From positions 62,806,001 through 62,870,000 of the forward strand of contig CM060734.1 of NCBI GenBank assembly GCA_030704615.1: 64,000 nucleotides of DNA. Direction: 5' to 3'. Positions 11,489 to 48,192 of the stretch are shown here, in pieces. Both the position numbers and the translations under genes were made by a program. This DNA comes from Takakia lepidozioides (taxonomy: Eukaryota > Plantae > Bryophyta). Below the pieces are notes generated by a model, which searched no databases, was not told where the DNA came from, and worked only from the letters and a program-made list of their open reading frames with translations. Numbering within the stretch: the stretch's first letter is position 1; each line of letters opens with the position of its first letter.

Positions 11489-13560
11489 TTAAAGCATTAA
11501 AATGTTGAAGGTTTGATATGAAGTGGCCAGTAGTATGTGTCAAGTATAAGAACATGACTGAACACAAACAAGAGATCAGACTAGAGATACAAGACTAGAC
11601 AAGAAATCAAGATCGGTGTGGCCATATGCACGATGAGTAAATATGAATCAATACGATCTTTATAACAATGAACAAAAGTACAAGATATTGGAACACGACT
11701 TGAATACTGGAATGCTGGAAACTGGACTGGAGTACCACATACAGGAAATTGGGCTAGAGTATTGGGAACTGGAAACAAGGGTAGCTTGAACTGGTGTTGG
11801 CGAGACTGAAGAGTGTCCAGTCTCGCCTCCTATATATACTAGCTACTAAGAAGTCTCCTAAGAAGCTTCCCCCCCCTACGGAGGTTTCTTGATGCAGAAG
11901 TTTCCAAGAGTAAACAAAGGTTTCTTGATGGAGAAGCTTCCTTAAACAAAGGAAGTATCTTGATGGAGAAGTTTCATCCAAAAGAAGCTTCATGAGCAGT
12001 TTCTCAAGTTATTCTTGGTAATTTGATAAACTCCCGGTAACATGGTAAGTAATGATAGATAATGGTAGATCATGGTAATTTCTGGTAACATGGTAACTTG
12101 GTAACTTCTGATATTTACTCCTGGTAAGTTCCTCTAGGCTATGTCTGTGGCATCACCCCCTCCTCTAGCACCGAGTTCCTCAAGGAGCGGTAAAATCTTG
12201 GACTTACTTAGAGTTGGAGAAAATCCAAAATCCAACGAATGATACTTGTCAAGTATTCGGCTTTTTGTTCTTGACTCAAATGATTTATAGGTCCCTGCAA
12301 CCATCGATAGTGTCCAACACCTTGAACTTGGGACCACGCAGTGATTTGAGCATTCTGATTTTCGAAATTGTATTCAAACATGATTTCGTTGCCTTCTGGG
12401 TCCGAAGCCTCAACCTCCAACAGAATCGAGTAGGCTCCACTTGTCGTCGTACGGGGTTTAGAGGAAGTACGCGTCGCATTGGTGGCCTATCGTCTCGAGA
12501 GCGTCGGCGTAATGTTGAAGGTCGTGAGAGTCGGAACGGCTGATCTGATAGTTGGGTAAGCGACAGCTTCAATGTATTTGGTTCTTGTAACTCCATGCTG
12601 CTAATACAAGATACAAGAGTACTAGAAGTGTAGCTATATATACTGATGTGTGGTGCTCATCTCTCCTTAGCGTGTATCAGGTACATTGAATGTGGATGTT
12701 TCACCTTGAAGCTAACTTGGCTGACATCATCGCATTGGCGAGGTTGGATGAAGGTTCCCACGTTCGTTCGCTGATGTCGTAGCTTTTCCAATGTACGAAA
12801 TACTCAAGATGTTTATACTTGATGTAAGAGTCTAGGACTTCGTCGACTTCATACTCAATTTCCTAATTGACTTCGATTAGTGGAGGTGATACGGAGACTC
12901 TCCCTAGAATATTCGACGGATGATACAATTCCAATAATGAAACATGAAAGACTGGATGGATGCACATACTTCGTGGGAGTTCAAGCCGAAAACTGACCGG
13001 ATTTATTTGTCGAATAATTTTGAATGATCCCAGGCGTTGATAATCCAACTTCCTTGATGGTTGCGAGGTTTGTATGTCCCGTCGAAGAAGCCACACACGA
13101 TCTCCGACCTTGAATTGAGGTTGGAATTGACGACGTTGATCTGCATACTCCTTGTATTGTTTTTGAGCTTCTGCGAGGTGGAATGTAAGCTCATTGTGAA
13201 TTATAGCAAGATGAGTAGCAAGGTTTTCTGCAGCAGGGCTTCCAACAGTCTTCATGTGGAAAATGTTTGCTCGAGGATGATGACCATAATTGGAGAAAAA
13301 TGGAGTTTGCTTGGTCGAAGAATGTATAGTGTTGTTATAGGCAAACTCAGCCAATGACAGAAGGTCTGTCCAATTATCTTGGTGATAATTTATTGTATAG
13401 CGAAGATAATGCTCCAAAATCTGGTTTACCCATTCGGTTTGACCATCAGTTTGTGGATGATTAGCTGTAGAGAGGTTGATCTTAGTATCCAATATATGAA
13501 ATAATCCCTTCCAGAAATCTGATATGAACTGTGGTCCTCGATCAGATACGATGTCCTTCG

Positions 13561-14285
13561 TGTCGCACACCTCACTTCGGTAAGCTTCCTTTCAAGTCAT
13601 AGTTACTCGCTTGATGCGCGCGCCTAACTCCCAAACTGGCCGCCCGGCCAACTCGGAGCTTCGGCTGCTCACCGGGGCATAACGGTCCCCCTTTACTCCT
13701 CCACAAGACCCTCTTTCAATTTGGGCCAAGTGAAAATTCCCTGTGGTCGATGGCAGTCCGGAATCGCTCCTAACACCTTGGTCGCTTCCCGGCTCGCACG
13801 CTTACTCACTAGTTTTTGGTCACCAACGGGCTTGCACCATTCTCGGGGTTACTACTCCCTATATATACTTCTGTGACTATCCGCGGGGGTTTAAAAAACA
13901 ACCATGTCATTTTATGACGAACCACCACAAAAACCCTCGATTCCCGGTGATGAGTTGCGGTGAGTCTTGGCCCACCCACCACGGTCCCATTGGACCGTGA
14001 TGAGTCCCAAGACTCCCCACGACTCCTACCACAAGGTCTCCGCCCCCATGGTGAGTCCTATGCCACCCCCACTAAGTCCCACTAAGCTACCACCACCCCT
14101 CATGGAACCATCCCCACCACAACCCGGTGTGCGGGGCTCCACCTAGTGAGCGCCTTCGCTTCCTTGAGTGCCTTGGGCACTCAAGGGTGCTTCAGCCCCC
14201 GCAACTAATGTTGTCACTGCCCCCACCACAGGGGCAGCCCCTCACGTGTCCCGACCCCCTGCCCTCAAGGCAAAGGGCGGCGACA
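13561..14285. mobile_element. Solo LTR (725 bp) of a second family inserted in the integrase
   Basis: TGTCGC...GCGACA termini with 5-bp TSD CTTCG (13556-13560, 14286-14290). Integrase sequence continues on both sides. Confidence 0.9.
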
Positions 14286-15875
14286 CTTCGGGAGTCCATG
14301 AATGCGGTAGATATTATTGAGGAATCTTGAGTCTTGCAGTTTCTTCGCCGGTAACCATCTTATTACATGGAATGAAATGTATCATCTTCGTAAAAAGATC
14401 TACAATAACAATGATTGAATCGGTGGTCTTGGAAATTGGAAGGTCCGTAATAAAGTCCATAGACACGGACGACCATGGGCCCTTGGGAATGGGTAATGGT
14501 TGAGAAGGTCGTAAGGTCGATGTCGTGGTCCCTTCGCTCTAGCACACGCGTCGCAAGATTTTATAAATTCTTTCACGAGTTTCCACATCTGCGGCCACCA
14601 ATAATCCCTGGATATCAATTCCACTGTTTTGTTGAAGCCAAAATGTCCTGCAGTCGGAAGATCATGACATGTTTGAAGAATTTGAAGTCGTGTAGGTCCT
14701 GGAGGTACATAAAGAAGTCCCTTGAAATAAAGTAAGTCATCTTTGAATTCGAAGTCGTTTGTAACATGTGGGTTGTCTCGATGTCGATTTAGTTGACTTC
14801 GTAGTGTCGTAGCAAATTGGTCGCTCTTCAGTGCTTCCTGAATCTCTTTTATGATCTCTACATCGTCATAGGTGGAATACATGGATAGCATATTCAATTG
14901 GAGATTTGGTGGTTTCAAGATGATGGATTTTTGTTGGTCAAAAGCTGCATCTTTTTTTTTTGGCGCAAGATACGATCGTCGAGAAAGAGTATCTGGTTTT
15001 CCTTGAAGATGTCCGAGACGGTAGATAATAACAAAATCAAACCTTGCTAGTGACATACTTCATCTTGCTTGTCGTTGATTCAAAACACGAGCACTCATAA
15101 AATACTCGAGGTTTTCGTGATCGGTATAGACTGTGACCTGAAGTTTAGCTCTCTCCAATAGATGACGCCACTCCTCAAAAGCATCGATAATCGCTAAGTT
15201 CTTTGTCATGGATTTTATAATTGATCTCCGCAGCGGAAAACTTGCGAGAACGAAAACCAACAGGGTGAAGTCGACCATCTGTACCGTATTGAGAGAGTAC
15301 CACGCCAAGTGCAAAGTCCGATGCATCTGCTTCCAAAAAGAATGGTTTAGATGGGTCTGCATGTACCAGTATTGAAGCCGTTGTAAATGCCTACTTCAGC
15401 ATTTCAAATGCTTGGTCAGCCTTCTCGTCCCATACAAATTTGTCCTTCACTGTGAGTCGTGTTAATGGTGGAGTAGTCATTGATAAAGATTATATAGAAA
15501 TTTGCAAATCCTATAAAATATTGTACATCTCGGACCAAAGTTGGTTTAATCCACTCGATGATGGTTTGTATTTGCTTCTGATCTATAAAGACTCATTTGT
15601 CGGAAATAATGTAGCCCAAAAATTCGACTTCAGATTGGTGGAAAAGACATTTTTCCAACTTGACGTATAGTCATTTTTCCCTCAATTTATCAAGGACAAG
15701 GCGTACATGACGACCATGTTCTTCTTCATTCTGTGTAAATATCAAAATGTCATTCAAATAGAAGACTACAAAGTCATCTAAAAATTCTTGAAAAATGTCA
15801 TTCATCATGTGTTGAAAAATTGCTGGAGCATTTGTAAGACCGAAAGGCATAACACTGTATTTGAAATGTGCGTAC

Positions 15876-25442: not shown

Positions 25443-25849
25443 TATGGGTTTGTCTTCACCCCCTCCAACCCATGAATTCCACCCACCTCTACCAGTTATC
25501 TGCTCCTCAGGAATGAGAGCGTCGAGCGCTGGGCTTGCTCATCATCTCGGCCTCGCAGCAACCCACCCCCCACCTTTAGCTCTGGCACATTCTCAACTTT
25601 TGAATGAGAAGTAGGCCCGCTTTCTTTCATCCTTCGTGCGCAAGAATGCAATGAATTTAGGGTTTAGGGACGAGGATACTCGATTGATTTTAGGTGCAGG
25701 ATGGCCTTGTCGGATAGTCGCGCATGTTGTACGTCTATGCTGGAGATCTCTGTCGATGGGGCAGCCAATCTCTGAGCTCATCCAGCATCTATCCCTGGGA
25801 TTTTTCAGTAATCTCGTTTACTGCGAGACCGGAGAGGGTTGAAAGGGCT
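25443..25849. promoter_or_regulatory. Bidirectional promoter/5'UTR region shared by NUP58 and LSM11
   Basis: 407 bp between divergent ATGs. Telo-box TTTAGGGTTTAGGG near 25656-25669 and a site II-like TGGGCT near 25530. Confidence 0.6.
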
Positions 25850-28800
25850 ATGGAGCGCTCTTCGCCTTCGCTCGACTTTCTTTCTGTACGTCAGCCCTTG
25901 TTTTTCCCCATAAGAGTTCATTACTGTATCCTATATCCCTCATTATCTCTTTGTGTCTTTCGAAATTCTCGTTGTTCTTGCACTTAAAGCCATAAATTGT
26001 TTCATTGTTTCTGGAGCTGGAGGAAATCCTTTGGACGCTTCTTTTCTCCTGACAAATGGGGACGAAATTTTTTGAAGGAAGAATTTGATGCTTTGGAGGC
26101 TCTAAGGACCGAAGGATTGCAGCCTCCGAATCCGCGCGTGCGACCTCTTGACAATCTCAATAAGTGCCGGCGTATTCTGCCCCAGGTTTCTCTTCATTCT
26201 CTCTCTGCCCTAGGAAATGAATCCACTCCAAGAAATTGTCGCAATTACACCTAGAGTAGACGTGGGATTGCAAATGTACAGTGGTAGCTGTCTGATTGAA
26301 TTCCGCAGCTGTCCCATACTGGTTACAGAAAACCGCTGTCAACAGTGCGGATACCCTATTGTTTAATGTTTTCTTGGGGGAATCACGATACAGTGTTCAC
26401 CTCACCATTATTGGGCTTAATGTACACTACTGATTACGTAGCCAGGAATGTGTTAAATCTTTGGTGAATCATGCTTCGGAGATGGGCCTACAATTCACAT
26501 GGCCTAATGAGACACTCTTTCTCCATAGAACACTGAAATTCAGTTTTTTTTCCTGATGACTTATGAACATTTCATTTACGCAATCATCCTTTGCCCAGTC
26601 TGTCCATATCCCTTTATCCTCAGACACCACAATACAGGGCTTGCACTTGCTGTCCTAGTTACAACAGACGGTACTGTTACAAATAATCCTAAATTACTGC
26701 TTTCGGAATTAGAGAACGTTGATCAGAATACTTAGGGGTGTGAGTTCCCTAGTACACCTTTTTGGTGAGAGAAACCTGAGGACAGTGAACTTGGGCATCA
26801 CAGATTGTCTAACAGGGGCTGGTTGGACTTGTCTGTGACAGGAGGTGCCTGAGTCTCTCGCCAATGTGCCTGTCCGGGAGCCTCGAACACAGGAGTCGAT
26901 TGAAGCACAGCGGCGAGCCAAGGTTTAACATAGTGTTCCCTTCCACCTTTCTTATGTTGTAATTTGCCTTCCCTTCCTCTTCGTATCTCTATAAGTTTAT
27001 GAAAGGTCGATAAATAGAATGACTGAAGACTTACAAAAAGGGTCACCTGGGACAGGCTCGCACCTCATTGGTGCTTGAGAAGGTTGGGGAGCGTGCCCGT
27101 CAAACCAAGATTCTCGACCATCTGGCAGGTGGCTGTTGTATGTTTCCTATTTGTGTTTCTGTTTTCTCATCTGTCTGCAGCTCTTGTGTCAATGCGCCTG
27201 CACACCTTACAAGATGTATTGTATGTAATTGCTAAAGTAAGGCCTGGCCCGGCATTGACAGCATATTAGAGAGGGCTCTAGTTTGTATTTCGGTAGCACC
27301 GATTTCTGAAAAAATTGCCATGTTTTGTTTCAGAGAAGTTGAGGCAGGGCCCCCTGAGTTTACTGGTCGAATGCTATGAGCAGCGAGGTCGTGTGCAGAT
27401 ATGGACCCGCCATTCGCATGGTGTTCGGGGGGCACTGGTGGGATTTCTACAGGCCTTGGACAAGCACTTTAACATGGTACTCTCACCTTCTGTTTGAAGG
27501 TAAACACTCAGGGTTATCCTAGGTGGGTGATGAGGGATGGAGTTAGAGAGAAATAGTTCATTAAAGCCATAGATACAGATACCAAAGACAGGCAGAGGTG
27601 GAGATTATAAACTAGAGTGTGGCAGGCATATGCAACAAGATGTTCAGAAACAAACTTAAACTAGTAAATTGCACAGCTAGGGTCTGTCCCATTTGACCAG
27701 GAGTCGGAAGCTTAGAAGTAAGTGAATCCAACAGACACTGCAAACCCTATTGAACTTCTTGGGACAAAGTTGTATTGGGCACATGAAATGCAATCCCTTC
27801 TCAAGGCTGGCCACAGGTGGGAGTGACCAGAGACATTTTTGCTGAAATAAATTTGTGAGAAAGTTCGTAGTAGTTTTGAGAGTTACAGGACCACACTATA
27901 TCCATCTAATTCAGGACTGAGATGAGATGGGAGAAAAGAATTGCCAATTATTAGTATTTAGTTTGACCTTAAGTATATATTCCCAACACATTCGCTAGGC
28001 AGGCTACCTCACGTCAGTTAATTCTGGAACTTCAGCACAGTAGGACTGATCTTATACCAAATTTCCAACATTTCAGGCATTGAGTTGGTCACTGCTGCTC
28101 ATTGTGGGCCCAATTCTAAACACCCTCTGTAGTGAAATGGGAGCTTATCTGTCAAATTGCAGGTTTTGCAAGATGTCGATGAACAATATACAGGTCAGCT
28201 TGATCTCATATTCTCGCTCTCGTTCTGCCCAGCTTGTAGATTTCTTTGGGAAGCACCAGCAGCTACTTCTGTCAAAAACTAACTCATGCTGTACTGCCAT
28301 ATGCATGTCGATTTCTGCTTGAATTATTAGCCCACGTCATTACGTGTCCTCACCATGGAGTAGCTTCCTGTGAAAGTACACCTGCAGATGTCTTAAGATT
28401 CAGCTTTGTTGTAGTTATCATGCTTTTCTCTTGAAAGTAGTGATGTGTATATCTAGTGATTGGGGATGAAGACAGTTCCAATTTCACTGTCTGACTGAAG
28501 AAGAGGTTTAGCCTTGGCTCTAGGAGATTGGAACACTGGAGGCTGGGGTCAGATCTGTTCAGAGGTCAACTTTTTACTACTCTCACTTCTTTAGTCTTCT
28601 CTCTTCACAGTGGTACGCCGGGTGCCTCGGCCAGTGCGTAAACGGGGCCGTGTGTGGACAATTCAATCTGAAGGAAAAGATGAGGTAGACTCCCTAGCCA
28701 TAACTTCATTGGAGCCAGCGGCCCCAGAAGTTTGTGCTGAAGCAGTTGAGACCCTAATAAAAGAGATGAAGGAGGTAAAATTGTTTCCAAAGCTGGAAAA

Positions 28801-29387
28801 CCGGCGCCGACACCTCAAGCAGGCAAGTGCATGCACATGGAACTTCTTCACATTTGTGATAACTTAAACTTATCCTTCTCATTTCTGTACCTGGCAGAAC
28901 AGCCTATGACCTTCCATCTTTTCCAGTACAGATGTCAATGCTTTTAAGTTAAAAACCCACTAGTGCCCTGTGAATTGGGGTGTTTCTGGGATTTTCGAAT
29001 CTTTGCGCCTTATCTTCACCCTCTGAGAATGCTCCACGCCTCTTTGATACCACTGTAGCTACTGAAAGGTGTGTCGTCAACCTGTGACACTAAGATTTGA
29101 ATGGAAGAAGTTGATTGCTTTCAAGTGCCCTTCTTCTAACAGGGGGCAGTAAGGATCATCTACACTACCTCAGAGGAGGCTGAGCTAAATATTCCACTGA
29201 TAGCATCTACTGAGTTTAGGAAACAATAGCTGAACCCTTTTTGTGTTGAAGGATTTCCTGAGAATGATGATGCTTGTGAGTCATTAACAACTCGTCAATG
29301 AGTTTTCCTTAAGTTTTCTCTTCAATGCCATGTTCATCACAGGTCTTCGTTCGAGGAGCCAGCGTGGTGATGGTTCGCAAGTTGTAA
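25850..29387 (+). CDS. LSM11: U7 snRNA-associated Sm-like protein LSm11 homolog (242 aa)
   Basis: Exons 25850-25885, 26078-26185, 26842-26922, 27056-27128, 27334-27476, 28163-28193, 28611-28822 (GC donor), 29343-29387; 729 nt, all phases consistent, no internal stop. N-terminal LDFLSEEFDALEAL...PPNPRVRPLDNL. Sm1 GPLSLLVECYEQRGRVQIWTRHSHGVRGALVGFLQALDKHFNMVLQDVDEQY. Spacer of ~65 aa. Sm2 RRHLKQVFVRGASVVMV. Confidence 0.88.
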
Positions 29388-30235
29388 GCTGTTGCTTGAA
29401 TGGGCTCCAGAGCATGTCACCAGGCAAAGCATTGTGCCAATTCAGTGGATGGAGACGTTTAAAGTTGATGGATCTCGTGGTTTTGTTTGCTAGAGAGTTC
29501 AAAAGCTGCTATTGCACACATCTGCCATCAAGCTCTAACTAGCTCTGTCATAGACAACACCCTACTACAAGGGATCCACAGGATTGAGCGACTCTGTATT
29601 GTCAATCTGAAAAATGAAAGACCTCAAGTTCTGAGTTTTGTTAGCAACATAGGATGATTGAGGCACCACCTTCATATACGGTTTGTGATTCCTACCAAAT
29701 GCTTTCTTACATCGATGGCACTCTCCATTGGTTAAATACATGGTGTGATTCCAGCACCACTGCATTTGCAGAGGTTGGCTTAGCAAAAAATTTAGGCAGT
29801 TGTGGCACTATCAAATGAATCCAGAAGCAGGATGACAGTACCTGTTTGTTCAGGTTTAAATCCAGTCACAAAGGACTTGTGTTTGCAGTGTGCGGTAACT
29901 CCCTGGTGCAGAGTGGGTAAGAGTACCGAGAGCTCCAAATCTCTTGTACCAACACATGAATGACTTGATTGTGGAAGCAAGTAAGACAAACACTCGGAAT
30001 AGTGAGAGGGTGGGCAAGCAAACTCGCTTTGTAGTTATACTGTGATGAACAAATATGATGCTGCACATTTGACGACTAATCCCCACATGGACCCGGTGTG
30101 TTGGCCTGGGGATTACTTTGTATCCTCATCGGATGAATTATTAACGAATGTATGTTGAATGTCGGTGGATGAAGCACGCACGTCGAGTGTTGGAGCTTTC
30201 CTCGGGAGGGAGAGAAGTGAGAGAGAGGGAGAGAG

Positions 30236-45219: not shown

Positions 45220-48192
45220 CAGTGTTGGTATGGTAACCACTCCAACACCTGCAAGAAAGCAATCCTAGATTAAAACCACATACATTCAAAGCTGGAGACT
45301 CAGCCAAAATGCAGAAAAAAAAATAATTTCAGAGTTCACAAGCCTACCCCTACTCGTCGTTCTCAAACAGCCCTCCCTCCTCAATCAGCTCCTCGTTCTC
45401 GTCAACTAGTATGTCCTCATCCTCCAAGAAGTCCTTGAACTTTCCTGCTTCGACTAGCTTACAATCAACACGGGCATCACTGGGCCAATTTTTGTAAACC
45501 ATTACCAATTTGTCCAGATTATCCACCCCCAGACGACATCGTCTAAGATCAGTCAGCACACCTGCCACGGAGAAAATTCTCTCTGTCTCAATCTGAGCAC
45601 TAGGTATTCCAAGAATTTGACGAGCCAACCACCCAACATTAGGGAACCTTGTCTCATACTCAAACCACCATTTCATTGGATCCAGTTTCTCCTCATTGTC
45701 AACGGGAAAACGTCGGAATAAAGAAAGCTCAGCCTTCAATAAGCACTCACTGGCCTCCTCAGTGGAGGCAGCCCTACCAAACAATCCATGTGAGGGTAGC
45801 TCAGGAGTGGGTGGATGCGGAGCTGTGCCACCTTTAGGGTTCAAGTGCTCAATCACAGTGATCAATAGTGGCAGCAATACAACTGAATCATATTCTTGCA
45901 CCAGACGTTCAGCTGACATCCTACCAATGTAATTAGCAATGCACTGTAAGCCTTTGAACTGTGGATCCAACATTAAGGCTAGCATGTTATGTGCCTTGTT
46001 CTCAATGAAATATTCAGCAAATGAAAGAAATGGGCGAAGAACCTCTATGATTTGGAGGGCCATGCGAGCATAAAACAACTCTATCTCCGCATCAAAAGAT
46101 CCATATTGTAAGCGTGGCACATGAGCTGCCTTACTTCACAATCTTCCTCATCTCCGTCATGATAGCCAAGCCAGCGAAGAGGGCATCTGAGAGCAGCCAG
46201 TAACCCCTTCGCTGGTTTAGAATGCATTGGTGCACTACAGGTGTCAAAGTGTCATCCACGGCTCTAGCTATGGCCCATGTCCACCCACTGGGAACCCTGG
46301 TTTGCAAAGCAGCAGATTGCCGTGTGTAGCAAATATTGATGGCATTAGCATACGCCAACGTCTCCTGAAACATAATGACTTTCGATGCAAATCTTGTCTT
46401 GACAGGGGTCCTAAGTTTTCTTTTGGGCAAGCCTGCATCCACACAGGCCTTCTCCCACTCCAACTTGCCCTTACCACTTTTCTTCGTCCAAGTGATGGTT
46501 TTTTGCAAGGCTGCCTGAGCCTCTTTCAAGCTCACCTCAATCATACTACCACTGACCTTCTCATCATTTGTTGCGTATTGGCATGCCTTAGACATGGCAT
46601 GACCAAAGCAAGACCCTGGTTAGGGCTTTGACAGCTTCAAAGGATCACATTTCACCACTGAAGTTAGGGCAGATTGCAAAGTCGCAAGGTTAGCCCCTTC
46701 ATCCTTTACATAAGCTATCACCTTGTCTGATAGCTTGAATTGAGCCAGCAGAGCTTTCACTTGGGCTGCAAGAGCAAGTCCAGATGTATCTGGAGCTTCA
46801 AAATACCAATTGTAATATGGCATGGACACCAAACCTCGTTGATAAAGTTTACCACAAGTGCAAAGGTATTATGTCCTGATCTTGACATCCACAAGTCAAA
46901 GGAGCAAGACACGGTGGATGCAGAGGCTATGGCAGGTAAAACATATGTGTCCATCGTTTTCTTGAACAAAGCAGGTAGATGGTCTTTCACAAGCTGTTTT
47001 CTGCTAGGGAATACAACCTGACCACACTGTCTCATGATTAATCTACGGAGCCAGGGATTCTCAACAACTTATAGGGGCATGTACCCTTTACAGACCAGAA
47101 GTACCAGATCTTCAATGAACCTCAGCTGGGCAGGATTATCTTGCCTGTATGGCCTACAACTGCCAAAGAACGAAGTGATAGCACTCGCACTCGGAGGCAC
47201 AGACTGTCGTTTTTTGGTTTTCTGACGTTTATTGCTACTTTGATCTACAACCGCTTGCCTATGGGCTTTGTATTTTGCAAGATCAGATCCATGCTCATTA
47301 GAGACATTTCTTCATTGCAATTATACCATGATCTGGATTGTAGTTTACAAAGTTTTTTCTAGTTCTGGTTGAGTTACTAGAGCTGTGAGCATTCTCCACT
47401 GAATGACACATAATGCACCTCATCAATTGTGTCTCATTCATCTCTACCTTAGCACTTGCATCGTTTAGGACAAAAAACGCCCAACACTCAGAACCTCTAT
47501 GATATTGGAGCCAAAGTCCTTGATTGGCGACCAAAACTTGCAAGCGCTGGCGCCACAGAGCCTCCTCCTCGGCAATTCAGTCTTCTTCCGCCTGATCACC
47601 AACTTGCAGGACCTCCTCGCTTGTCACGCCTGTCTCCAAGTCCTCTACATCCTCCCCAGTAGATAGAAACAATGTTTTCAGTCTCACTGATCTCTAATGC
47701 ATTGAAGAAATCCATCTCCCCTAGCTAACCTTGTCACAAAGTTGATGTGAATCCCATAAAACAAGCATTCAACACTCAACCGCATGTAACGAGCAACAAA
47801 TGACCAAGATGCTCAAAGCAATACCTAAATCGGCCTCCTTGCTTGATGCTGCATTGAAAGCCAACAAACCACCTTCATTGTGATCCCTTCCGTAGCCAAA
47901 ACCAAAGCAAGAATCTCACAAAATCTGCCGCCATCTCTAGGCTAAGCGCATTGATACCTGAACGGCGATACCACCAACCGAGTTCCAGCGAAAAAAAAAC
48001 AAGTAACAACATCAACAAAGGTGAGCCGAGACCAGTCGGCTAGGGTATCGGCCTCCCCGAAATCCTAATCATACCCTACAGGTAGGTTCCTCTACGCATT
48101 TCCTTTTCTCTGGAACCGGCTGGTAGGGGTTCCATACCCGGGTGCATAACCGGGTTGATACCCGTATTTTTGTACATACCAGACCAACACTG
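45220..48192 (-). mobile_element. hAT DNA transposon with frameshifted transposase
   Basis: TIR CAGTGTTGGTATGGTA / TACCAGACCAACACTG (15/16) and 8-bp TSD GTATTCAC (45212-45219, 48193-48200). Transposase pieces in 45350-47715: BED-like finger (CWAFF, CIMCH), SFDLW, VKDEGAN, TPVKTRF and dimerization domain WW...LARQILGIPSAQIETERIFS. Confidence 0.95.

What the first reader, a model, noticed from the sequence alone, without database searches (positions are those of the whole stretch)
25850..29387. Intact LSm11-like gene: possible U7 snRNP-type RNA processing system in a land plant
Seen: eight small exons, fragmented in the ORF track, splice into an uninterrupted 242-aa protein (MERSSPSLDFLSEEFDALEAL...GPLSLLVEC...GVRGALVGFLQALDKHFNMVLQDVDEQY...RRHLKQVFVRGASVVMVRKL). 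It has the LSm11 hallmarks: a long N-terminal extension with an LD..S..FD.L.AL / P.P....DNL motif, an Sm1 with R...G.RG...GFL.A.DK..NM, and a long spacer between Sm1 and Sm2. Established: in animals LSm11/LSm10 replace SmD2/SmD1 in the U7 ring, and the LSm11 N-terminus with FLASH recruits the cleavage complex for non-polyadenylated histone mRNAs. Angiosperm histone mRNAs are polyadenylated, whereas Chlamydomonas/Volvox histone mRNAs end in a stem-loop. Inference: this lineage either retains U7-like histone 3' processing or has repurposed an LSm10/11 ring for an unknown small RNA. I cannot tell whether orthologs are already annotated in non-seed plants.
Basis: partly seen in the sequence, partly recalled or inferred. 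Interest (0 to 1): 0.9.

Follow-up and report, generated by a model that had tools for sequence, protein, structure and literature searches.

The report
Expressed LSm11 gene in a bryophyte
This is a real, spliced and transcribed plant copy of LSm11, the protein that in animals marks the U7 particle that cuts histone messages; such copies are already in databases for mosses, ferns and conifers, so it is a new member of a known family whose role in plants is still untested.

Summary
Eight exons on the + strand (25850-29387, 729 nt with the stop, 242 codons) have GT-AG borders, except a GC-AG seventh intron. One 1146-nt transcript contig from a public run carries all seven junctions.

The protein is an LSm11 orthologue, not SmD2:
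- The Sm1 exon alone hits human LSm11 best among solved structures.
- A streptophyte-only profile scores human LSm11 at 76 bits against 46 for SmD2, in three collinear parts (N-terminal motif, Sm1, Sm2).
- Orthologues carry Pfam LSM11_N plus LSM.
- A family profile picks seven of the eight exons as the top seven of 3,858 six-frame segments.
- All seven intron positions match the Physcomitrium patens gene, which one public source names "U7 snRNA-associated Sm-like protein LSm11".

Named homologues occur in streptophyte algae, mosses, a lycophyte, ferns and gymnosperms; none is from an angiosperm. An October 2026 preprint already reports LSM10/LSM11 homologues in land plants, so this is a new member of a known kind. 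The U7-like histone 3'-end role is inferred, not shown.

The scan has no earlier LSm11 note on other DNA. Unchecked notes on this genome report SLBP and FLASH-like genes. The joined protein was never sent to a tool; all tests were exon by exon or on database orthologues.

The parts
25850..25885 (+). Exon 1: start codon and 12 codons ending in the LDFLS start of the LSM11_N motif
   Evidence: junction 25885|26078 in transcript contigs of two runs; tblastn match to Sphagnum and Psilotum orthologues
26078..26185 (+). Exon 2: core of the N-terminal LSm11 motif (FDALEAL ... PPNPRVRPLDNL)
   Evidence: Family profile positions 21-68, E 1e-17; 85% identical to Sphagnum fallax and also matched by algal and insect LSm11
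26842..26922 (+). Exon 3: conserved ESI.AQ.RAK segment of the N-terminal extension
27056..27128 (+). Exon 4: basic helical segment before the Sm fold (ends in phase 1)
   Evidence: Junctions 26922|27056 and 27128|27334 in contigs; orthologue matches; predicted long helix in the Sphagnum model
27334..27476 (+). Exon 5: Sm N-terminal helix and Sm1 motif
   Evidence: Best PDB hit is human LSm11, E 0.004, against 0.12 for SmD2; 208 hits at E<=1e-3 in 1.84 billion proteins, and about a third of the 150 listed show the LSm11 N-terminal motif by a simple pattern; profile E 3e-26
28163..28193 (+). Exon 6: 31-nt micro-exon (VLQDVDEQYT), end of Sm1
   Evidence: same 31-nt exon in Physcomitrium
28611..28822 (+). 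Exon 7: Sm1-Sm2 spacer of about 60 residues, then FPKLE.RRRHLKQ leading into Sm2
   Evidence: E 3e-8
28823..29342 (+). Intron 7 with a GC donor (GC-AG)
   Evidence: Sequence; joint 28819>29340 with 4 ambiguous letters, in both runs, allows 28822|29343
29343..29387 (+). Exon 8: Sm2 strand (VFVRGASVVMV) and TAA stop. Reads RGA where ten streptophyte orthologues have RGD
27477..27499 (+). Alternative 5' splice site. Use of the donor at 27500 retains 23 nt with an in-frame TGA, giving a product cut off after Sm1
   Evidence: Joint 27497>28161 (cut +2) in run X1 only; sequence
25854..25871 (+). Short CTTCGC-type repeat in the first codons with in-frame length polymorphism (+6 nt in X2, +12 nt in X1)
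   Evidence: table 4

Best explanation
The locus is a functional, transcribed orthologue of LSm11 in a non-seed land plant, probably a liverwort. The identity is shown. The protein has an Sm fold split by a spacer of about 60 residues, preceded by an extension of about 105 residues with the LSM11_N motif and a conserved basic helix. The function is inferred. As in animals, it most likely replaces SmD2 next to an LSm10-type partner in a seven-membered Sm ring on a U7-like small nuclear RNA. Its N-terminal extension would dock a FLASH-like protein and the CPSF73/CPSF100/symplekin cleavage module. Together with SLBP, this particle would cut replication-dependent histone pre-mRNAs after a 3' stem-loop. 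Identity as LSm11 is about 0.95 likely. The histone 3'-end role in this plant is about 0.55-0.6 likely.
For: - Gene model and expression: eight exons with all seven junctions in one transcript contig, from two independent studies.
- LSm11 rather than SmD2: the Sm1 exon alone scores LSm11 at E 0.004 against 0.12 for SmD2. A streptophyte-only profile scores human LSm11 at E 3.4e-20 (76 bits) in three collinear stretches, against 5e-11 (46 bits) for SmD2. An AlphaFold model of the Sphagnum orthologue (pLDDT 80.6) has human LSm11 chains from U7 snRNP structures as its top four Foldseek matches.
- Family domain: orthologues carry PF28412 plus PF01423, and PF28412 is LSM11_N. Named insect and algal 'U7 snRNA-associated Sm-like protein LSm11' proteins carry the same pair.
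- Window versus family: seven exons are the top seven six-frame hits. Of 65 positions invariant in ten streptophyte orthologues, 62 are kept.
- Orthology: intron positions are identical to the Physcomitrium patens gene, which one public source names LSm11.
- Function in animals: the Lsm11 N-terminal extension binds FLASH and recruits the cleavage complex (PMC3884669, PMC5636114, PMC12774660).
- Pathway context: preprint 10.64898/2026.10.14.759114 reports LSM10/LSM11 homologues in land plants, SLBP in mosses and stem-loop features after bryophyte histone genes. Unchecked scan notes report SLBP and FLASH-like genes in this genome.
Against: - No U7-like RNA, LSm10, SLBP, FLASH or histone gene could be examined here. 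The window has no Rfam match.
- No experiment in any land plant shows non-polyadenylated histone mRNA ends or a U7 particle.
- Sm2 reads RGA instead of the RGD that is invariant in ten streptophyte orthologues, so RNA contact might be altered.
- One run shows an unproductive splice form.
- A formal tree with an SmD2 outgroup was not built, because no SmD2 sequence was available by reference.
Confidence: 0.6

Rival explanations
1. It is a true LSm11 orthologue, but in land plants the LSm10/LSm11-type ring sits on a different small RNA or serves another 3'-end or RNA-surveillance task, with histone mRNAs made by ordinary polyadenylation.
For: Plant histone mRNAs studied so far (angiosperms) are polyadenylated, which is established knowledge. 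The preprint describes plant stem-loops as increasingly divergent and decoupled from SLBP. The text I read reports no plant U7 RNA, although 3,424 plant genomes were scanned with the Rfam U7 model.
Against: The part under strongest conservation is the N-terminal extension. Across plants, algae and insects, six N-terminal positions are invariant in 16 sequences (F19, L25, P32, P33, D41, N42), and many more in streptophytes alone. In animals this region is the FLASH/cleavage-complex docking hub (PMC3884669, PMC12774660). The family is missing from angiosperm hits, the group whose histone mRNAs are known to be polyadenylated, which fits a histone-linked role. SLBP and FLASH-like notes exist for the same genome (unchecked).
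Confidence: 0.2
2. It is a diverged SmD2 paralogue working in spliceosomal snRNPs, and the LSm11 resemblance is superficial.
For: SmD2 is the next-best family in every comparison, and LSm11 and SmD2 share Sm1 features.
Against: There is a 30-bit margin for LSm11 with a plant-only profile. The LSM11_N domain is present, and SmD2 lacks such an extension (PMC10578488). There is a long Sm1-Sm2 spacer. The Sm1 exon search returned LSm11-type proteins: about a third of the 150 listed show the N-terminal motif by a simple pattern, and none of the short ones read was SmD2.
Confidence: 0.02
3. It is a transcribed but decaying gene in this lineage, no longer making a working protein.
For: The RGD>RGA change in Sm2. 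An alternative donor gives a premature stop. One low-depth contig carries A>C at 27405, which would turn the invariant Thr of WTRH into Pro.
Against: The reading frame is open across all eight exons. 62 of 65 invariant positions are kept. The length polymorphisms are in frame, +6 and +12 nt. The fully spliced productive form is the only form in run X2. The position after RG also varies among the other family members aligned (E in insects, N in Klebsormidium).
Confidence: 0.05

Closest known systems
Animal LSm11 (U7 snRNA-associated Sm-like protein; human chains in PDB 6V4X, 8G1U, 9N96, 9NH5)
   Same: Same three-part layout: an N-terminal extension with the LD.xS..FD.L.AL...PP motif, an Sm1 of the G.RG..G(F)L.AFDK..N type, a long insertion, then an Sm2 R-G strand. 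It is the best sequence, profile and fold match.
   Different: The plant protein is shorter: 242 residues against 360, an N-terminal extension of about 105 against about 150, and a spacer of about 60 against about 130. It has no obvious RG-rich methylation tract. It has a strongly conserved plant-specific ESI.AQ.RAKA..S helix. It reads RGA instead of the human RGE. No partner RNA or protein is known in plants.
Physcomitrium patens protein (accessions listed include XP_024359265.1) and other bryophyte, fern and gymnosperm homologues (Sphagnum, Ceratodon, Diphasiastrum, Ceratopteris, Adiantum, Ginkgo, Cryptomeria, Taxus)
   Same: Collinear over all eight exons with 52-68% identity. All seven intron positions and phases are identical in Physcomitrium. 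Same LSM11_N plus LSM domains.
   Different: No orthologue at 90% identity or more was seen, so this species' protein, probably a liverwort's, appears not to be in the searched collections. It uses a GC donor in intron 7 where the moss has GT. It has the D>A change in Sm2.
SmD2 (spliceosomal Sm ring subunit that LSm11 replaces in U7 snRNP)
   Same: Closest paralogous family. Similar Sm1 and Sm2 (GPL..L, FD.H.NM.L, (F)LRGDSV) and the same predicted ring position.
   Different: SmD2 is about 110 residues with no LSM11_N extension and only a short loop. It scores 30 bits lower with the plant profile.

Membership tests
LSm11 (U7 snRNP-specific Sm-like protein) | Sm fold with Sm1 and Sm2 motifs | tested here: met
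   Exon 5 (Sm1) and exons 7-8 (Sm2) match the family profile. Orthologues pass the Pfam LSM threshold. The Sm core is modelled at pLDDT above 90.
LSm11 (U7 snRNP-specific Sm-like protein) | Closer to LSm11 than to SmD2 or any other Sm/LSm protein | tested here: met
   Sm1 exon alone: LSm11 E 0.004 against SmD2 0.12. Plant-only profile: 76 against 46 bits. The Foldseek top four are LSm11 chains. A formal tree with an SmD2 outgroup was not built.
LSm11 (U7 snRNP-specific Sm-like protein) | Long N-terminal extension carrying the LSM11_N motif (Pfam PF28412) | tested here: met
   Exon 2 matches profile positions 21-68 at E 1e-17. The local Pfam copy lacks this model, so the window itself could not be scored against it.
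LSm11 (U7 snRNP-specific Sm-like protein) | Long insertion between Sm1 and Sm2 | tested here: met
   Exon 7 encodes about 60 poorly conserved residues between the two motifs. This stretch has low pLDDT in the orthologue model.
LSm11 (U7 snRNP-specific Sm-like protein) | Gene is intact and expressed | tested here: met
   Open frame over eight exons. The fully spliced contig is in run X2, with most junctions in X1.
LSm11 (U7 snRNP-specific Sm-like protein) | Assembles with LSm10 and SmB/D3/E/F/G on a U7 snRNA with a non-canonical Sm site | not testable with these tools
   Only this window of the genome is readable, and it has no Rfam match. No LSm10 or U7 sequence was available.
LSm11 (U7 snRNP-specific Sm-like protein) | N-terminal extension binds FLASH and recruits CPSF73/CPSF100/symplekin | not testable with these tools
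   Known for human and Drosophila (PMC3884669, PMC5636114, PMC12774660). A FLASH-like gene is only an unchecked note for this genome.
SmD2 | Protein of about 110 residues with no N-terminal domain and a short Sm1-Sm2 loop | tested here: not met
   242 codons, an extension of about 105 residues before Sm1 and a spacer of about 60 residues.

The most novel reading that the evidence does not exclude
Non-flowering land plants, from bryophytes to gymnosperms, still run a complete U7-type, SLBP-dependent, non-polyadenylating histone pre-mRNA processing pathway with a plant U7 RNA that has not yet been found, and the pathway was lost on the angiosperm stem. This locus would be its LSm11 subunit in a liverwort.
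Probability: 0.4. Interest if true: 0.6.

Novelty: new member of a known kind. Interest (0 to 1): 0.4.

Why it matters
Textbooks treat U7/SLBP-dependent histone mRNA 3'-end formation as an animal mechanism, with some protists, and plant histone mRNAs as polyadenylated. LSm11 is conserved, expressed and under strong constraint in its N-terminal extension, the part that docks FLASH and the cleavage complex in animals. It occurs in bryophytes, ferns and gymnosperms, and no angiosperm homologue was found here. This makes the question 'do early land plants still use a U7 particle?' directly testable in tractable models such as Physcomitrium and Marchantia. The gene itself is not a discovery. One public source already names the moss orthologue LSm11, Pfam has an LSM11_N model that covers plant proteins, and a 2026 preprint lists LSM10/LSM11 in land plants.

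Tried and rejected
- Pfam on single exons gave nothing relevant. The exons are too short, and the local Pfam copy lacks PF28412.
- Exon 2 alone against PDB sequences gave no hit. The N-terminal match to human LSm11 appears only with profiles.
- An Rfam scan of the whole window found no RNA family, so no U7 here.
- I tried to fetch SmD2 sequences for an outgroup tree by searching with an Sm-domain-only alignment at E up to 10. The 120 listed hits were all LSm11-type, so no tree was built.
- The Lopez and Samuelsson 2008 paper is not held.
- Literature search for LSm11 together with bryophyte names found nothing beyond the 2026 preprint.
- Full-length tests used database orthologues (P0178, P0174, P0319 and others) as stand-ins.
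- Complex prediction was not used because no partner sequence (LSm10, FLASH) was available by reference.
- My first seven-exon model (217 codons) was rejected in favour of eight exons once orthologues and contigs showed exon 27056-27128.

Full report
**Observation**

Reading the + strand gives eight exons:
- 25850-25885
- 26078-26185
- 26842-26922
- 27056-27128
- 27334-27476
- 28163-28193
- 28611-28822
- 29343-29387

Six introns are GT-AG and the seventh is GC-AG. My first pass missed the 73-nt exon 4 and gave 217 codons. Orthologue matches and transcript contigs restored it. An in-frame ATG 42 codons upstream (25724) cannot be excluded as the start. Orthologues have only 10-20 residues before the LDF motif, which favours 25850.

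**Expression**

Two public runs from two studies hold the locus. When they were laid on 25700-29500, a 1146-nt contig of run X2 carried all seven junctions at the predicted borders, with no mismatches and no intron coverage. Run X1 carried six of them, plus intronic contigs. It also showed an alternative donor at 27500 that retains 23 nt with an in-frame TGA, so that form is unproductive.

Both runs differ from the window by in-frame insertions (+6 and +12 nt) in a short CTTCGC repeat near codon 4. The runs are only guessed to be RNA, but a fully spliced contig is itself the evidence. A processed retrocopy in DNA is a remote alternative.

**How the protein was tested**

Each was searched by reference, and full-length tests used database orthologues.

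*Single-exon searches.* Pfam on single exons was blank. The Sm1 exon alone hit human LSm11 chains best among solved structures (E 0.004), ahead of SmD2 (0.12). The same exon searched exhaustively against 1.84 billion representatives gave 208 hits at E<=1e-3. Many are 200-400 residues long with Sm1 in the middle. About a third of the 150 listed show the N-terminal LD.xS..FD..xAL...PP motif by a simple pattern, and many of the rest are short fragments.

*Who the homologues are.* Names and sources place them as follows:
- Streptophyte algae: Mesostigma, Chlorokybus, Klebsormidium, Chara.
- Mosses: Sphagnum, Ceratodon, Physcomitrium.
- A lycophyte: Diphasiastrum.
- Ferns: Ceratopteris, Adiantum, Psilotum.
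- Gymnosperms: Ginkgo, Cryptomeria, Taxus.
- Chlorophyte and insect proteins named 'U7 snRNA-associated Sm-like protein LSm11'.

One public source gives the Physcomitrium protein that same name (accessions listed include XP_024359265.1). The plant proteins carry precomputed PF28412 plus PF01423. PF28412 is LSM11_N.

**LSm11 versus SmD2**

A profile built only from ten streptophyte proteins (A2) scored human LSm11 at E 3.4e-20 (76 bits). The match came in three collinear stretches: N-terminal motif, Sm1 and Sm2. SmD2 scored 5e-11 (46 bits). An AlphaFold model of the Sphagnum orthologue had mean pLDDT 80.6 with the Sm core above 90. Its top four Foldseek matches were human LSm11 chains from U7 snRNP structures, followed by SmD2 chains. 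I could not obtain SmD2 sequences by reference, so no outgroup tree was made.

**Tying the window to the family**

Orthologues align collinearly to all eight exons, with 52-68% identity overall. Mosses are highest. A 30-sequence family profile scanned against all 3,858 six-frame segments of the window returned seven of the eight exons as the seven best hits, in profile order.

Of 65 positions invariant among the ten streptophyte proteins:
- 62 are kept.
- One falls on a split codon that reads Val as expected.
- Two differ: V>I in Sm1 and D>A in the Sm2 RGD.

The Physcomitrium gene has eight exons. Its introns fall at CDS positions 36, 144, 225, 298, 441 and 472, and at the KQ|VF border. These are identical in position and phase to the window gene.

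**Mechanism**

*Shown:* this is an expressed LSm11 orthologue whose N-terminal extension is under strong constraint.

*Inferred from animal work:* Lsm11 replaces SmD2 in the U7 Sm ring. Its N-terminal extension binds a FLASH dimer, and together they recruit CPSF73, CPSF100, symplekin and CstF64. A basic helix in the extension holds CPSF73 in place (PMC3884669, PMC5636114, PMC10578488, PMC12774660). The plant family keeps both the N-terminal motif and a conserved basic helix (exons 3-4). Whether that helix corresponds to the human CPSF73-contacting helix is speculation.

*Context:* preprint 10.64898/2026.10.14.759114 reports LSM10/LSM11 homologues in land plants, SLBP in mosses and seed plants, and stem-loop features after bryophyte and gymnosperm histone genes. 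Unchecked first-reader notes on this same genome report three SLBP loci and a FLASH-like gene. Another agent's note calls the genome liverwort-like. None of these could be verified from this window, and Rfam finds no RNA family in it.

**Distribution**

No named hit or 59 is from an angiosperm, despite the abundance of angiosperm proteomes. This suggests loss in flowering plants. However, those searches depend on shared words, and the exhaustive search carries no taxon labels, so this is a lead and not a result.

**Verdict**

The U7-like histone role is plausible but untested. The gene family in land plants is already in databases and in a recent preprint, so this is a new (probably liverwort) member of a known kind. 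Interest is moderate, mainly as a handle on an experimentally open question.

Noticed in passing
window 27477-27499: An alternative 5' splice site in run X1 retains 23 nt carrying an in-frame TGA. This is an unproductive isoform that would end the protein right after Sm1.
   Followed up: partly
window 25854-25871: In-frame length polymorphism (+6 and +12 nt) of a CTTCGC-type repeat in the first codons, between the assembly and the two transcript data sets.
   Followed up: partly
window 27405: One low-depth X1 contig reads C for A, which would change the family-invariant Thr of WTRH to Pro. This is probably an assembly error or a rare allele. It sits in the same contig that carries the unproductive splice form.
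   Followed up: no
window 29358-29360: Sm2 reads RGA where all ten streptophyte orthologues have RGD and human and insect LSm11 have RGE. Both transcript contigs agree with the genome.
   Followed up: partly
window 12866-15056 (-): Remnants of a Ty3/gypsy-type retrotransposon: an integrase zinc-binding domain and a Tf2-1-like SH3 domain in two ORFs.
   Followed up: no
window 45353-46120 (-): An ORF with a hAT-family transposase dimerisation domain.
   Followed up: no
P0011 (Chara braunii GBG85701.1) and P0018 (Mesostigma viride): In these streptophyte algae the LSm11 module lies inside very long gene models (1247 and 804 residues) with Arg/Asp/Glu-rich N-termini. In Chara the model also has a C-terminal N-acetyltransferase-annotated part. 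These could be real fusions or merged gene models.
   Followed up: no
P0151 / P0003 (Sphagnum fallax BDL97_13G112800): The deposited Sphagnum fallax isoforms lack the equivalent of exon 3 or the N-terminus, while the Sphagnum troendelagicum model has them. These are likely annotation gaps or alternative isoforms.
   Followed up: no
(database hits): No named homologue comes from an angiosperm, although gymnosperms, ferns, lycophytes, mosses and streptophyte algae are all represented. This hints at loss of LSm11 in flowering plants.
   Followed up: partly
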